The translations under genes were made by a program, and so were the position numbers. This document shows, piece by piece, positions 33,961-64,000 of a stretch of DNA of 64,000 nt (positions are counted from its first letter, which is position 1; each line of letters opens with the position of its first letter). This stretch comes from Macrostomum lignano (taxonomy: Eukaryota). The stretch is taken from contig NIVC01000103.1 in NCBI GenBank assembly GCA_002269645.1, forward strand, positions 803,393 to 867,392, given 5' to 3'. Below the pieces are notes generated by a model. That model was given only the letters and a program-made list of their open reading frames with translations. It made no database searches and was not told the DNA's origin.

Positions 33961-36324
33961 ACTCATTCTGTTGGTAGCACAATCAAGTTTCCAGTCCCAG
34001 AGTGAGTCGATGGCGGCATGTAAAAAAGCAAGATGAATTACTGTCACTGATAGGGCTAACAAATATACCTGCTCTACTAACAGTAGTAAAAATAGCTTTT
34101 CAGTTCATCTGTTTTAAAATAACAAGTGGTGAGGAAAGCAGGCATCGGACAGATGAAACCAACCTAATTCTCATCTTTCGCTATCGCCTGCTATTTGTTT
34201 TCTGCAACCACTCGCTATATCTTTCGCGTTCAAACAGAAAAACCTTTTCTTAACCAGTTAGTTAGGGGCCAGGATTGAGGACTCCGCGCATACAGTCTAA
34301 TAAGTGCTTGGACAGAGCCATACCTATACCGCCCTACGAGCGTATGCAGGGGTTGCAGAGTAGTTTGCATAGCCACTGTCCATTGACCATAGCTTTTTAT
34401 TTTCAACACTGTCACAAGTTGGTTTATAACTACTGCAGAGTGAGTACAGAAATAAACACAGTCTATTCATCAACCCGTCCGTTTAGAGAAAAACGAGTTT
34501 AGTATATGAGACGTTAGAGCTTTTTATTTACAGAAAACTTTATACTCAATCGTAAAATGAGAAGAAATACGAGTTGTGATTTAAACAAAAAAGACGTTAA
34601 ATGTATTGATAATTAAGCAAAAAGAGAGCTCAGTTAAGATCGTCGCACCTTTTTATTTTGAATTTCGAGTGGCAATTGATGAGCACTGCTTATTGGCAAA
34701 GAATGGTTGTGGAATTAATTTAAAATACGTTCCAGTGAAGTTGAAACACCAGACAGTACACAAAAACACAAAGAAAAAGTGAGCCACAAATTCACGACTT
34801 TGATTCTACTAATGAGGCCGCAACATCAACAACAATAACCCAGCTTTTCAGAATCAATCTCGCGCACAAAAATTTCCTGACAGTGTACCTGTATGTCGAT
34901 TAGACAGGCAGGATTCATATCTTTTTGTTTTCATAATGTAAATTTTACTCGCCGCCAGCAGCTTATTTAGAATCGGATTAATAGAAGAAATTGTTTTAAT
35001 ACCGGCAAACAACATTCGATATCGCGTTGAAGTTGAAATGAGAACTGAATCATCAGGAAATGCTGGCAGCTCTGTGTAGTCTATTCGTCATCAGCCGCAT
35101 GCGCGTTATTTCACCGCCCGTCAGGAACTGGTGCCTCATCAGCTCCAGGGCCGACTGTCTCTTACTGCGGTTTTGAGTCGTGCAGCTGCGGTAGAAATCC
35201 TCCAACTCTTTGGAGCAACCAGGTGGAAGTTTTGGACAACCGTTATTCTTTATCAGCTGGGCTATTGTTAATAAATTAGATGCGCTATGAAACGGCCTCT
35301 GACGGGTGGCCATCTGGTAGACTGAGCAGCCGAACGCCCAGATGTCCGACTCTCTGCTGTACTGAGGCGAGGTGTCAGCCTCGCCAGCTCCCAGCAGCTC
35401 TGGAGCCATGAAGTTATGAGTGCCTCTGGGTGTCTGAGTGCTAGCTAAGTTGTGACTGACTGACAGTTTCAGTTCGATTGAAAGGCCGAAGTCGATCAGC
35501 TTAATTCTCGTGCCTTCGGAAAGCACCATGATGTTGGAGCAGTTGATGTCTCTGTGGATCACGGGCGGACGTCGGCTGTGCATGTAGAGCAGCGCGCTGC
35601 AGATCTGCAAGATGTTCCATTGATTACTGTAGTTTGAACTGGCCCTCTTATTTAAACGAGTCCTGTAAAACCTGTGTAAGCGTGTGCATGAGTACGTTCC
35701 TGCGTACCGTATTGGCGCGCTTGAGCTGTATGTGCTCAGGAGTCAGCGGAACGCGCTGGTTGTGGGAACATGTCGCCGAAGGCGTGATCAAAAGCTCTCC
35801 AGTCAATATTCTAATTTTTTGAAAGCACAGGAAACTTATTCACCTGCTCGCTAAAGTCTCGAATTTTGTTCTCAGGCATTGGAGCGCCGTTAATGAATGT
35901 TTCCAAGGTCTTTCCCTCCAGCAGCTCCATGAACAGAACGATTGTGGCAGGCTCAGTCTGAGCGATGTGAAAGAATCTGACAATGTTTCTGTGCTGCAGT
36001 CGGCACAGGTTCCTCTCGCTCTCGACCGCTTTATCGATCTTTGTACGGTCATGAGCATATTGATCAGCGGTCAATTGACCGACGGGCAGTTTAATAATTT
36101 TCGCAACGCACTGGATGCCTTTGTCGGTAAGGACTTTGTAAACTTCGCCAAAGCCTCCTCTGCCGATGAGGTCACCTACGTCCCAGAGCTCCATGAACGG
36201 CGGGTCTTCGTGTCTGTGTTAATTTGAATTCGAATCGCGTACAATAATAAGCTTTTATTAGTACAGTTTATGATATCTGACTATATGAAGCAGTCCATTG
36301 CCGCTAACCTTGCTCTGTAACATG

Positions 36325-36655
36325 TCCCTGTACTGTAGCTGTTCCTGTACTGTAGCTGTCCCTGTACTGTAGCTGTCCCTGTACTGTAGCTGTTCCTGTA
36401 CTGTAGCTGTCCCTGTACTGTAGCTGTTCCTGTACTGTAGCTGTCCCTGTACTGTAGCTGTCCCTGTACTATAGCTGTCCCTGTACTGTAGCTGTCCCTG
36501 TACTGTAGCTGTCCCTGTACTGTAGCTGTCCCTGTACTGTAGCTGTCCCTGTACTGTAGCTGTCCCTGTACTGTAGCTGTCCCTGTACTGTAGCTGTCCC
36601 TGTACTGTAGCTGTCCCTGTACTGTAGCTGTCCCTGTACTGTAGCTGCTCCTGTA
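36325..36655. repeat. 17-bp minisatellite (GTAGCTGTCCCTGTACT) in an intron of paralogue B
   Basis: Direct observation. Confidence 0.95.
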
Positions 36656-61332: not shown

Positions 61333-61610
61333 CTCTCTCTCTCTCTCTCTCCCCCCAGTGAAATGAAATTCTAACAGACGATTCGGGCTGAGAAAAGCTG
61401 TACAGAGAGAATAGAGTTAGCTACATAGGCGATCTCTGCTTACAAAGATTAGTGAATCAAACAACAAATAGACAAGCTCGGGCCGAGACTCGTCTGATCA
61501 TGTTAAGCTATCGAGATACAGTACAACAGCTTACCTGTAATAACGATTTAAAAGATAACAATAATATACTAGCTGATGCGCATATTGAGTAAGCTACTGT
61601 GAGTAGTGAG

Positions 61611-64000
61611 TCATACTATTTGCAAAAACTCGTCCATGTTCACCACTGGTTTCTGGCTGGGAGTGGCTCTTTTGCGTTTCTGCGGAGCTTCTAAAAGGAT
61701 AAAGTTGACCGGTTTAATCAAGCAGATCCCGACAATAGTGTGTAAAATTAACTTCCCCTTGAAGCCTGCAACCACAAACCTATGACCGTCTCAACGTCAT
61801 GAATGACCCTACTCAGATGATCACAAACCGATGACCCAATTGAATCAACCCAAACTATGACCAAAACCCATGATTCCAAAGTTATGAACCAAAACCCGTG
61901 ACCTTAGTTATACAATATAAGGACCTGAAATCAAAGCAATGAACCCAAACCAATGACCTCAAAGCCATGACCTCAAACCAATGACCGCAAAGCCATGACC
62001 TCAAAGCCATGAACCCAAACCAATGACCCCAAGGCCATGAACCCAAACCAATGACCCCAAGGCCATGAACCCAAACCAATGACCCCAAGGCCATGAACCC
62101 AAACCAATGACCCCAAGGCCATGAACCCAAACCAATGACCCCAAGGCCATGAACCCAAACCAATGACCCCAAGGCCATGACCCCAAATCAATGACCCCAA
62201 GGCCATGAACCCAAACCAATGACCTTAAGACTACAAAATCGCAAGCCCCAACATGAACTGCCGAGTACTAACCAGTCAAAAACAGATGCATAGGGTCATT
62301 GTCCTGCTGAGAATAGAACAGTATAACATCCCTATGATCCGTGATGCTATTCCGAGTGTCCGTGATCACCAAATCGCATTTGTTTCGCTCGTTAAGATTC
62401 GTCAAGTAGTTGGAAGCGTCGGGTTTTGAAATCACCAACAGATGCTGCAGAAAAAAGTTCAGAATACGAGAACGCTTCGAAAATTTCCACCTGATGTATG
62501 TGATAAAATTAGCAAAATATTTTTACCTTCTTGGCCACTTTAACAGTGCATGGGCAGCTGCCATGAGGTCCAGCCTGAAGTTCAGCTTTAAAAGACGAAA
62601 TATCTGCATCTGAAAATTATAGTCTGGTTTGATGTACTAGACAGTCTATAGTTCTTGAGGGCAAGCATTTAAACTCAAGAGGAGGCATTGGGTGGCGTGA
62701 CAGGTTTGTCACAGGCGTCAGAAAAGGTTGTCAGGAGACTGGGGTGTCAGGAGAGACTGAGTTGTCAGGAGAGACTGGGTTGTCAAGAGAGACTGGGTTG
62801 TCAGGAGAGACTGGAGTGTCAGGAGAGACTGGGTTGTCAAGAGAGACTGGGTTGTCAAGAGAGACTGGGTTGTCAAGAGAGACTGGGTTGTCAGGAGAGA
62901 CTGGGGTGTCAGGAGGGACTGGGGTGTCAGTGTCAGGAGGGAATGGGTTGTAAAGAGAGACTGGGGTGTCAGGAGAGACTGGGTTGTCAAGAGAGACTGG
63001 GTTGTCAAGAGAGACTGGAGTGTCAGGAGAGACTGGGTTGTCAGGAGAGACTGGGGTGTCAGGAGGGACTGGGGTGTCAGTGTCAGGAGGGAATGGGTTG
63101 TAAAGAGAGACTGGGGTGTCAGGAGAGACTGGGTTGTCAAGAGAGACTGGGTTGTCAAGAGAGACTGGAGTGTCAGGAGAGACTGGGTTGTCAAGAGAGA
63201 CTGGGTTGTCAAGAGAGACTGGAGTGTCAGGAGAGACTGGGTTGTCAGGAGAGACTGGGGTGTCAGGAGGGACTGGGGTGTCAGTGTCAGGAGGGAATGG
63301 GTTGTCAAGAGAGACTGGGGTGTCAGGAGGGACTGGGGTGTCAGGAGGGACTGGGCTGTCAAGAGAGACTGGGGTGTCAGGAGAGACTGGGGTGTTAGAA
63401 GAGACAGTGAGGTGCCGAGAGAGACAGTGAGGTGTCAGGAGGATGTCAGGTGCTACAATAGGGTGTCAGGAAGATGTCAGGTGCTACAATAGGGTGTCAT
63501 GAGGATGTCAGGTGCTACAATAGGGTGTCAGGAGGATGTCAGATGCTACAATAGGGTGTCAGGAGGATATCAGATGCTACAATAGGGTGTCAGGAGGATA
63601 TCAGATGCTACAATAGGGTGTCAGGAGGATATCAGATGCTACAATAGGGTGTCAGGAGGATGTCAGATGCTACAATAGGGTGTCAGGAGGATATCGGATG
63701 CTACAATAGGGTGTCAAAGAAGCACGACAGGATCTTACGCGGCAGCGGATCGTCAAAGTACACCCAAATATCGTGGCAGCCACTGACTGTGGCTTGGTTT
63801 GGATGAATATCAAAAATGCCAAGTTTAACTTGCTGTCCTAAAATGTTTGTTGAAAATAAAAACAAAAACGATGCATGCAATTCATAAAGCACTAATTGTT
63901 TTACAATCTCAGAACAGAAACGATATTAAGAACTCACTAGAATCGGTGATGACATCAGAGGTCACAATGGCATTGGTAGGCTGGTGCTGGTCATTATAAT
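61611..64000 (-). CDS. Rel-homology-domain gene 1, 3' part (end of RHD, IPT-like, KRKR NLS); 5' end lies outside the window
   Basis: Exons >64000-63938, 63837-63739, 62609-62527, 62444-62273 and 61765-61611 join in the same phases as gene 2. Motifs [38 protein letters not shown] and PQKRKR. Confidence 0.8.
61940..62225. repeat. 28-bp repeat (ATGAACCCAAACCAATGACCCCAAGGCC)
   Basis: Direct observation; intronic. Confidence 0.93.
62720..63400. repeat. 18-bp repeat (GTCAGGAGAGACTGGGTT) with higher-order blocks
   Basis: Direct observation; intronic. Confidence 0.94.
63430..63715. repeat. 31-bp repeat (GTCAGATGCTACAATAGGGTGTCAGGAGGAT)
   Basis: Direct observation; intronic. Confidence 0.92.

What the first reader, a model, noticed from the sequence alone, without database searches (positions are those of the whole stretch)
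35053..64000. Co-oriented cluster of three Rel-homology genes followed by two ankyrin-kinase genes
Seen: all five genes lie head-to-tail on the minus strand (RHD1, RHD2, RHD3, ANK-kinase C, ANK-kinase B). A third ANK-kinase carrying the hypervariable array is ~16 kb away. Known: NF-kB signalling uses RHD factors, ankyrin inhibitors (IkB; the p105/p100 C-terminus) and kinases. Inference: this may be a lineage-specific, physically clustered recognition/immune module in which ankyrin and kinase functions are fused and several short RHD factors are co-inherited. The clustering could also be coincidental.
Basis: partly seen in the sequence, partly recalled or inferred. Interest (0 to 1): 0.85.

Follow-up and report, generated by a model that had tools for sequence, protein, structure and literature searches.

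The report
Flatworm Rel-gene array beside ankyrin-kinase genes
This stretch of the flatworm Macrostomum lignano genome holds the tail of a seven-gene row of short NF-kB/Rel-type transcription-factor genes, followed by two genes of a flatworm-specific ankyrin-kinase family; the genes are real, but I found no support for the idea that the two families form one signalling module.

Summary
On the minus strand lie RHD1 (cut by the window end), RHD2, RHD3, ANK-kinase C and ANK-kinase B. The window is Macrostomum lignano contig NIVC01000103.1.

RHD2 (378 aa, 7 exons) is GenBank PAA90847.1. It scores 55 bits on Pfam RHD_DNA_bind, and its model matches RelA/c-Rel over both RHD domains. RHD3 is divergent (24.7 bits, below the cut-off of 27) but folds the same way. 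The three genes are the 3' end of a seven-gene tandem RHD array.

The ANK-kinases belong to a Macrostomum-specific family with more than 60 database proteins. Their kinase is closest to WNK, MAP3K and PLK kinases, not IKK. Their ankyrin part is generic, with no IkB in the top 60 matches. Paralogues fuse the same ankyrin module to a caspase.

The linkage does not recur:
- none of 4 other ANK-kinase loci has an RHD exon within 10 kb;
- none of 3 other RHD loci has an ANK-kinase;
- only two 94-100 % identical duplicate copies of this same locus repeat it.

The best reading is two neighbouring tandem arrays. RHD3 and ANK-kinase C may be co-transcribed, since they lie about 1 kb apart. The proteins are already auto-annotated. 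Interest is moderate to low.

The parts
61611..64000 (-). RHD1, 3' part only. Exon 3 (partial) runs from the window end to 63927, exon 4 is 63835-63740, exon 6 is 62447-62310, and the last exon ends at the stop codon 61613-61611 (...[26 protein letters not shown]). Exons 1-2 lie beyond the window. The gene is not called in the GenBank annotation.
   Evidence: Exon 1 in L001 is 69 % identical to P0122 and 49 % to RHD2. Exon 4 is 47 % identical to RHD2 exon 4 (E 3.6e-9).
53913..60039 (-). RHD2, complete, 7 exons: 60039-59651, 59207-59110, 55117-54971, 54886-54788, 54702-54617, 54330-54147, 54046-53913. It encodes 378 aa: RHD N-domain, IPT dimerisation domain, KRKR NLS and a short helical acidic tail. 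It is GenBank PAA90847.1.
   Evidence: GT-AG at all introns and an open frame; 100 % identity to P0121. Pfam RHD_DNA_bind 55.2 bits; p65/c-Rel, E 6e-8. AlphaFold pLDDT 86.9; Foldseek best match RelA, E 2e-18, about 300 aligned columns.
55753..58588 (-). P-element/THAP9-like transposase remnant inside intron 2 of RHD2, on the same strand. It has an in-frame stop at 58399-58397 and a frame change near 56600.
   Evidence: TNP-like RNaseH_N 120.6 bits, GBD 107.2, Tnp_P_element 79.6, RNaseH_C 56.8. THAP 40.9 bits.
47873..52184 (-). RHD3, complete and divergent, about 375 aa. Exons: 52184-51811, 50786-50679, 50592-50512, about 50512-50460, about 50375-50264, about 50160-50079, 48350-48114, about 47975-47873. 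It has no KRKR NLS and an acidic C-terminal helix.
   Evidence: splice phases are the same as in RHD2; 99-100 % identity to P0288. Pfam 24.7 bits, below the cut-off of 27. RHD3-like P0139 matches the family profile at E 1.5e-13; pLDDT 79; best Foldseek match RelA, E 4e-14.
48398..50014 (.). 28-bp minisatellite (about 57 copies) filling an intron of RHD3. Its many short reading frames are not coding.
   Evidence: paralogue P0288 splices across it; the same unit occurs in RHD1 intron 1.
41949..46860 (-). ANK-kinase C. Ankyrin block 1 is 46860-46291, followed by a small exon near 46250-46200, then ankyrin block 2 at about 45367-44882. Kinase N-lobe is 42968-42585 and kinase C-lobe 42530-41949. 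A 15-bp minisatellite (45490-46130) is intronic. The catalytic motifs GxGxxG, AxK, HRD, DFG and APE are all present.
   Evidence: UniProt models P0003/P0004 are 89-100 % identical. for the kinase class.
35053..38149 (-). ANK-kinase B, a paralogue of C. Ankyrin block 1 is 38149-37562, ankyrin block 2 is 37361-36873, a small exon lies near 36750-36709, kinase N-lobe is 36218-35841 and kinase C-lobe 35610-35053. An in-frame TAG at 37894-37892 replaces a Ser codon of P0014.
46861..47872 (.). RHD3 to ANK-kinase C intergenic spacer, about 1.0 kb, of which 345 bp (47043-47387) is a 23-bp minisatellite.
   Evidence: The repeat-adjusted distance is about 0.67 kb, under the 1-kb operon criterion of PMC8629364.

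Best explanation
The region is the junction of two independent tandem gene arrays in Macrostomum lignano.

Upstream array:
- It is the 3' end of a seven-gene, co-oriented array of short Rel/Dorsal-type transcription-factor genes.
- RHD2, RHD3 and the other full-length proteins of the array are about 340-390 aa; RHD1 is only partly reconstructed.
- RHD2 and RHD3 are predicted to have a two-domain Rel-homology region. The base-contacting residues of the recognition loop (RFRY..E) are conserved in RHD1 and RHD2; RHD3 has Phe for the Tyr.
- RHD1 and RHD2 then have a KRKR nuclear-localisation signal; RHD3 has none. RHD2 and RHD3 end in a short acidic helical tail.
- None of them carries ankyrin repeats.
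- Inferred: they act as dimeric kB-type DNA-binding factors. RHD3 may be a modulatory partner.

Downstream array:
- Two members of a Macrostomum-specific family follow. In this family an N-terminal ankyrin protein-binding module is fused to a catalytically competent STE/WNK-like Ser/Thr kinase.
- In paralogues the same ankyrin module is fused to a caspase.
- Inferred: the ankyrin part recruits a partner and the kinase or caspase is the output.

Both arrays grew by local duplication in a minisatellite-rich region. Their adjacency is a single historical juxtaposition, copied with the recent duplication of the locus. It is not a recurrent, selected linkage. RHD3 and ANK-kinase C lie close enough that co-transcription is possible but unproven.
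For: Identity of the locus:
- The window is an exact match to GCA_002269645.1 contig NIVC01000103.1.

RHD membership:
- Pfam 55.2 bits for RHD2, and 41-63 bits for six other M. lignano RHD proteins and the unnamed relative P0122.
- p65/c-Rel are the best solved sequence matches.
- AlphaFold models of RHD2 and RHD3 (pLDDT 86.9 and 79.0) match RelA, c-Rel and p52 over about 300 columns, ahead of NFAT.
- R33, R35, Y36 and E39 equivalents are conserved; RHD3 has Phe for Tyr36.
- The nearest named proteins outside Macrostomum are insect Dorsal/p65.

Seven-gene array:
- Order along the strand is PAA90851, PAA90850, PAA90849, a 354-aa gene, RHD1, RHD2, RHD3.
- Other RHD loci are also tandem arrays: L006 has 3 copies and L012 has 3-4.

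ANK-kinase family:
- More than 60 Macrostomum proteins; outside hits are about 30 % identical and cover only one of the two domains, kinase or ankyrin.
- Other family loci are tandem arrays too (L004, L005).
- Caspase-fused paralogues exist (preprint 10.1101/2023.12.11.571055).

No recurrent linkage:
-.

No homology to IkB or IKK:
-.
Against: - Under a crude uniform-placement estimate of my own (about 5 RHD loci, a few tens of ANK-kinase loci, a genome of several hundred Mb recalled from memory, a 20-kb window), chance adjacency would be about 1 %. So the juxtaposition is not trivially expected. Gene-dense, duplication-prone regions and the post-hoc choice of 'immune-sounding' neighbours weaken that figure.
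- Only ±10 kb was examined at each of the 7 comparison loci.
- An older UniProt gene model (P0033) fuses RHD3 with ANK-kinase C.
- The spacer is short.
- No expression or interaction data were available.
Confidence: 0.7

Rival explanations
1. Functional NF-kB-like module. The ankyrin domain of the neighbouring ANK-kinases binds the clustered RHD factors as IkB does. The fused kinase plays the IKK role. The genes are kept together because they work together.
For: - The cluster is real and co-oriented.
- Both families are lineage-specific.
- Canonical NF-kB components are reported as hard to find in flatworms (PMC13563047 and PMC11432056), which leaves room for replacements.
- The ANK module is reused with a caspase, which suggests a signalling adaptor.
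- Adjacency is retained in all three copies of the locus.
Against: - The ankyrin region has no IkB among its 60 best solved-structure matches.
- The kinase is nearest WNK, MAP3K and PLK, not IKK.
- None of 4 other ANK-kinase loci and none of 3 other RHD loci show the linkage.
- The three copies are 94-100 % identical, so they are not independent.
- RHD3, the gene nearest the kinases, lacks the NLS that IkB normally masks.
- No kB consensus site lies in the region.
Confidence: 0.1
2. Operon-type co-transcription. RHD3 and ANK-kinase C, and perhaps RHD2 as well, are transcribed as one polycistronic unit and resolved by spliced-leader trans-splicing. This would give co-expression without requiring the proteins to interact. 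It is compatible with the best explanation.
For: - Same strand.
- The RHD3 stop to ANK-kinase C ATG distance is about 1.0 kb, or about 0.67 kb after removing a minisatellite.
- The RHD2 to RHD3 distance is about 1.7 kb, or about 0.74 kb after adjustment.
- PMC8629364 reports 30 % of M. lignano genes as SL trans-spliced and 15 % as lying in operons, using a repeat-adjusted threshold of 1 kb.
- UniProt model P0033 joins RHD3 to ANK-kinase C.
Against: - P0033 is a poor model. It reads through intronic minisatellites and a stop codon, so it is weak evidence of a real transcript.
- The operon criterion also needs SL reads at the downstream gene, and these could not be checked.
- According to the same paper, SL trans-splicing is enriched in conserved genes, and these families are lineage-specific.
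Confidence: 0.25
3. Assembly artefact. The adjacency or the copy number would then come from mis-joined or uncollapsed repeats in the PacBio assembly.
For: - The region is full of minisatellites.
- Three near-identical copies exist on different contigs.
- Mlig_3_7 had to be deduplicated by others (PMC8629364).
- ANK-kinase B has a lone in-frame TAG.
Against: - The same gene order, RHD2 then RHD3 then ANK-kinase C, is found independently on three contigs of 0.44-1.1 Mb.
- Gene models are intact with consistent splice phases.
Confidence: 0.03

Closest known systems
Class II NF-kB / Rel proteins (RelA/p65, c-Rel, Drosophila Dorsal/Dif)
   Same: - Two-domain Rel-homology region: an N-terminal DNA-binding domain plus an IPT dimerisation domain.
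- Conserved RFRY..E recognition loop (RHD3 has Phe for the Tyr).
- A basic NLS directly after the RHD in RHD1 and RHD2.
- No C-terminal ankyrin repeats.
- The best sequence and fold matches are RelA and c-Rel, and the nearest named proteins outside Macrostomum are insect Dorsal/p65.
   Different: - Only about 19 % identity to RelA.
- The redox-sensitive Cys38 is replaced by Ser, Thr or Lys.
- The tail is very short (about 40-60 aa) instead of a long transactivation region.
- RHD3 lacks the NLS.
- The genes sit in tandem arrays of 3-7 copies.
Divergent RHD transcription factors of the planarian Schmidtea mediterranea (seven genes, PMC13563047)
   Same: These are also flatworm RHD genes that sit on long branches and are hard to assign to NF-kB classes.
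   Different: I made no direct sequence comparison. The Macrostomum set seen here is larger (at least 14 genes across four loci) and is arranged in tandem arrays. No function is known for it.
IkB proteins and the ankyrin C-termini of p105/p100
   Same: An ankyrin-repeat protein encoded next to RHD genes; both are protein-binding repeat modules.
   Different: - No specific similarity: the top 60 solved matches are DARPins, ankyrin and tankyrase.
- The ankyrin part is two blocks of about 3-4 repeats each, N-terminal to a kinase.
- No degron or PEST region was identified.
- Binding was not tested.
Platyhelminth ANK-caspases and ankyrin-plus-kinase proteins such as ILK, TNNI3K and ANKK1/RIPK4
   Same: - An ankyrin module is fused to an enzymatic output domain.
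- M. lignano paralogues carry the same ANK module (about 60 % identical) on a caspase, or on a kinase plus a caspase (preprint 10.1101/2023.12.11.571055).
   Different: - The kinase here is STE/WNK-like with all catalytic motifs present. That ILK is a pseudokinase, TNNI3K is TKL-type and RIPK4 carries its kinase at the N-terminus is from my own knowledge.
- The family appears restricted to Macrostomum.

Membership tests
Rel homology domain (RHD) family | Significant match to the RHD DNA-binding domain profile (Pfam PF00554, cut-off 27 bits) | tested here: met
   RHD2 scores 55.2 bits. Six other M. lignano RHD proteins and the unnamed relative P0122 score 41-63 bits. RHD3 alone scores 24.7 bits, just under the cut-off, but its near-identical paralogue P0139 matches the family profile at E 1.5e-13.
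Rel homology domain (RHD) family | Two-domain fold: N-terminal beta-sandwich plus C-terminal IPT/TIG dimerisation domain | tested here: met
   AlphaFold models of RHD2 (pLDDT 86.9) and RHD3 (79.0) align over about 300 columns to RelA, c-Rel, p52 and p50, with E 2e-18 and 4e-14 and TM-score up to 0.79. Pfam RHD_dimer was not detected by sequence. Caveat: the input alignments contained canonical RHD proteins.
Rel homology domain (RHD) family | Recognition-loop residues that contact DNA bases (p65 R33, R35, Y36, E39) | tested here: met
   R, R, Y and E are conserved in RHD1 and RHD2. RHD3 has R, R, F and E. Cys38 is replaced by Ser or Thr. Actual DNA binding was not tested.
NF-kB class I (p105/p100, Relish) | C-terminal ankyrin-repeat (IkB-like) region in the same polypeptide | tested here: not met
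   RHD2 and RHD3 end 40-70 residues after the IPT domain and give no Ank hit.
NF-kB class II (Rel/Dorsal) | NLS at the C-terminal edge of the RHD and a C-terminal transactivation domain | tested here: inconclusive
   A KRKR motif is present in RHD1 and RHD2 and absent in RHD3. Only a short acidic helical tail follows. Transactivation is not testable here.
IkB family (for the ANK part of the ANK-kinases) | Specific sequence relationship to the IkB ankyrin domain, plus a signal-response degron | tested here: not met
   No IkB appears among the 60 best solved-structure sequence matches. The only DSG-like string (DSGDTA in gene B) is part of the ankyrin repeat consensus.
IkB family (for the ANK part of the ANK-kinases) | Physical binding to an RHD dimer and masking of its NLS | not testable with these tools
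   Only single-chain prediction is available, so no multimer prediction or experiment was possible.
IKK family (for the kinase part) | IKK-type kinase domain followed by ubiquitin-like and scaffold/dimerisation domains | tested here: not met
   The best solved matches are WNK1, MAP3K2, PLK4, ASK1, TNIK and MST3, with no IKK in the top 60. The protein ends about 30 residues after the kinase domain.
Active eukaryotic protein kinase | Gly-rich loop, AxK lysine, HRD, DFG and APE motifs | tested here: met
   GRGGFGEV, AAK/VAK, HRDINCSN, DFG and APE are read directly in genes B and C. Pkinase scores 107-120 bits.
SL-resolved operon (M. lignano) | Same-strand neighbours less than 1 kb apart after repeat adjustment, with the downstream gene SL trans-spliced (PMC8629364) | tested here: inconclusive
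   The distance criterion is met for RHD3 to ANK-kinase C (about 0.67 kb) and for RHD2 to RHD3 (about 0.74 kb). SL reads cannot be checked with these tools.

The most novel reading that the evidence does not exclude
Macrostomum has replaced the missing canonical IkB/IKK layer with its own ANK-kinase family. On this reading ANK-kinase C is co-transcribed with RHD3 from an SL-resolved operon, binds the clustered short Rel factors through its ankyrin module, and controls them by phosphorylation. The ANK-caspase paralogues would couple the same sensor module to cell death.
Probability: 0.07. Interest if true: 0.85.

Novelty: new member of a known kind. Interest (0 to 1): 0.38.

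Why it matters
- Flatworms are often described as lacking clear NF-kB. One survey reports no p50/p105 in Platyhelminthes (PMC11432056), and another finds only divergent RHD genes in planarians (PMC13563047).
- In M. lignano, a transgenic regeneration model, the short Rel-type factors are expanded. I found at least 14 genes in four loci, one a seven-gene array. They have intact DNA-contact residues and a confidently predicted RelA-like fold.
- These genes are concrete candidates for the missing transcriptional arm of flatworm innate immunity or stress signalling.
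- The neighbouring ANK-kinase family shares its ankyrin module with caspase-fused paralogues. It is a candidate lineage-specific signalling family.
- The specific claim of an RHD/ANK-kinase module would be important if true, but it is currently unsupported.

Tried and rejected
- A word-indexed protein search with RHD2 exon 1 alone found nothing. The full-length spliced protein then found the GenBank entry, so the first result was a false negative of the prefilter.
- I first read a RelA-like stretch in the frame 50171-49902 ('[13 protein letters not shown]...PLLSHP') as RHD3 exon 3 running into the repeat array. Mapping P0288 showed that the true exon 3 is 50592-50512 and that the resemblance was spurious.
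- The many open reading frames across 48033-50144 are the three frames of a 28-bp minisatellite, not coding sequence.
I used an alignment of P0121 and P0122 instead.
- A kB-site scan (GGGRNWYYCC) gave 24 hits against 4.6 expected. All of them are one 20-bp minisatellite at 20896-21511, and none lies in the finding region.
- Literature searches for Macrostomum with NF-kB or with Rel homology found nothing relevant to these genes.
- NFAT/TonEBP membership was considered. These rank clearly below Rel/NF-kB in fold search, at E 1e-12 to 1e-13 against 1e-18.

Full report
**What the sequence is**

The window is eukaryotic, with spliced genes and many minisatellites. A model of ANK-kinase C retrieved more than 60 Macrostomum lignano proteins, the best at 92-95 % identity. 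Nothing outside that genus was better than about 30 % identical, and those matches covered only one of the two domains, kinase or ankyrin. The reverse complement of the window's last 20 kb is base-for-base identical to GCA_002269645.1 contig NIVC01000103.1 (locus L001). The organism is therefore the free-living flatworm M. lignano.

**The observation**

Two ANK-kinase genes lie on the minus strand.
- ANK-kinase B spans about 38149-35053 and ANK-kinase C spans 46860-41949.
- Each has two ankyrin blocks followed by a split protein-kinase domain. Pfam gives Pkinase at 108-120 bits for the C-lobe exons and Ank_2 at up to 64 bits.
- The two are paralogues, 61-78 % identical per exon.
- UniProt models P0003, P0004, P0014 and P0027 confirm the exon structure. 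They also show that the 15-bp and 17-bp minisatellites are intronic.
- All catalytic motifs are present: GRGGFGEV, AxK, HRD, DFG and APE.
- Gene B has an in-frame TAG at 37894-37892 where P0014 has Ser. This could be a nonsense allele or an assembly error.

Three RHD genes lie upstream on the same strand.

RHD2:
- It assembles into seven exons with canonical GT-AG borders and a 378-aa open frame.
- It is 100 % identical to PAA90847.1.
- It scores 55.2 bits on Pfam RHD_DNA_bind, against a cut-off of 27.
- Its best solved relatives are p65 and c-Rel, at E 6e-8.
- An AlphaFold model has mean pLDDT 86.9. It shows two beta domains, a disordered KRKR segment and two C-terminal helices.
- By Foldseek its 30 best PDB matches are all NF-kB family chains over about 300 columns (RelA at E 2e-18, TM up to 0.79). 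NFAT and TonEBP come only at E 1e-12 to 1e-13.

RHD3:
- All of its exons match paralogue P0288 at 99-100 %. One intron is filled by a 1.6-kb 28-bp minisatellite.
- It is more divergent. Pfam gives 24.7 bits, below the cut-off.
- Its near-identical paralogue P0139 matches the family profile at E 1.5e-13.
- Its model (pLDDT 79) again matches RelA best, at E 4e-14.
- It lacks the KRKR signal.

RHD1:
- It is cut by the window end. Exons 1-2 and part of exon 3 lie beyond base 64000.
- Exons 4, 6 and 7 are in the window, and the stop codon is at 61613-61611.
- It is not called in the GenBank annotation.

In RHD1 and RHD2 the base-contacting residues equivalent to p65 R33, R35, Y36 and E39 are all conserved. 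RHD3 keeps R, R and E but has Phe for the Tyr. Cys38 is replaced in all three.

**The wider context changes the picture**

The three genes are the tail of a seven-gene co-oriented array. Its order is PAA90851 (342 aa), PAA90850 (387), PAA90849 (340), a 354-aa gene, RHD1, RHD2, RHD3.

An exhaustive profile search found 14 representative clusters at E ≤ 1e-30. The 12 whose source I looked up are all M. lignano proteins, most of them auto-named 'RHD domain-containing protein'. The next named hits looked up were insect Dorsal/p65 at about 1e-11 to 1e-12.

Other RHD loci are tandem arrays as well. L006 has three copies and L012 has three or four.

A P-element/THAP9-like transposase remnant lies in intron 2 of RHD2.

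**Testing the proposed link between the two families**

| Test | Result |
|---|---|
| Four other ANK-kinase loci on different contigs, ±10 kb (about 110 kb in all) | No RHD-like exon by tblastn; the control locus gave 25 HSPs. Several of these loci hold ANK-kinase tandem copies |
| Three other RHD loci, ±10 kb | No ANK-kinase-family sequence |
| Contigs NIVC01000085.1 and NIVC01000278.1 | ANK-kinase C follows RHD3 there too, but these copies are 94-100 % identical to the window, so they are duplicates or haplotigs of the same locus |
| Ankyrin region against solved structures | Matches DARPins, ankyrin and tankyrase; no IkB in the top 60 |
| Kinase against solved structures | Matches WNK1, MAP3K2, PLK4 and ASK1; no IKK in the top 60 |
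| kB consensus sites in 35053-64000 | None |

Co-orientation is uninformative, because each array is co-oriented by descent.

**What remains open**

The RHD3 stop and the ANK-kinase C start are about 1.0 kb apart, or about 0.67 kb without a minisatellite. In M. lignano 15 % of genes are assigned to SL-resolved operons, using a repeat-adjusted limit of 1 kb (PMC8629364). An old UniProt model (P0033) fuses RHD3 to ANK-kinase C, although it is a poor model. Co-transcription is therefore possible.

The ANK module is reused with a caspase in paralogues. This fits published platyhelminth ANK-caspases and an M. lignano kinase-caspase (preprint 10.1101/2023.12.11.571055). It suggests that the ankyrin part is a recruitment module in a lineage-specific signalling family, but nothing ties it to RHD proteins.

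**Comparison with what is known, and verdict**

The RHD genes are members of the Rel/NF-kB family and are closest to class II (Rel/Dorsal). They have very short tails. They parallel the seven divergent RHD genes reported in Schmidtea (PMC13563047).

The genes are already in GenBank and UniProt as automatic annotations. I found no paper that discusses them.

The anatomy is confirmed and extended. The functional-module interpretation is not supported, but it is not excluded either. I rate novelty as new members of a known kind, and interest as moderate to low.

Noticed in passing
window 55753-58588 (minus): A P-element/THAP9-like transposase lies inside intron 2 of RHD2, on the same strand as the gene. 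It has an in-frame stop inside the THAP domain (58399-58397) and a frame change near 56600. It is therefore probably decayed, or it contains introns.
   Followed up: partly
window 37892-37894: ANK-kinase B has an in-frame TAG (AAA TAG ATT) where the near-identical UniProt protein P0014 has Ser. This could be a nonsense allele, a pseudogene or an assembly error.
   Followed up: partly
M. lignano paralogues P0024, P0036, P0038, P0040, P0043, P0047: The same ankyrin module (up to about 60 % identical) is fused to a caspase domain, or to a kinase plus a caspase, in other family members. The module is thus shared between two different output enzymes. A preprint notes flatworm ANK-caspases and an M. 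lignano kinase-caspase.
   Followed up: partly
UniProt A0A1I8JHQ7, A0A1I8HQK5, A0A1I8IFN0 (P0282-P0284): These 251-252-aa entries cluster at 90 % identity with RHD2 but are named 'Inositol-pentakisphosphate 2-kinase'. That is probably a wrong automatic name.
   Followed up: no
window 20896-21511: A 20-bp minisatellite in which each unit contains a perfect kB-consensus match (GGGAGTCTCC), with 24 copies. It lies about 2 kb downstream of ANK-kinase A. It accounts for the entire excess of kB-like sites in the window and is probably coincidental.
   Followed up: no
window 48398-50014 and L001 4249-4399: The same 28-bp minisatellite unit fills an intron of RHD3 and occurs in intron 1 of RHD1. Nearly every intron and spacer in the region carries a different minisatellite (23 TRF rows in 29 kb).
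   Followed up: partly
window 13720-18997 (plus): ANK-kinase A has a single 826-aa exon made of highly regular ankyrin repeats (Ank_4 250 bits, 9 stretches), followed by kinase exons about 40 % identical to those of B and C. It is convergent with gene B rather than co-oriented.
   Followed up: partly
window 23620-24114 (minus): An intron-less ORF encodes a universal stress protein (Usp) family member (Pfam 82.5 bits).
   Followed up: no
RHD3 (window 47873-52184) and paralogues P0139, P0287, P0288: RHD3 lacks the KRKR nuclear-localisation motif present in RHD1, RHD2 and most family members. It ends in a strongly acidic helix ([26 protein letters not shown]). It may be a modulatory or heterodimer-only subunit.
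   Followed up: no
L006 and L012 (contigs NIVC01000109.1, NIVC01000020.1): Other RHD loci of M. lignano are also same-strand tandem arrays of 3-4 genes. Some copies are not called in GenBank. The family totals at least 14 genes in the four loci examined.
   Followed up: partly
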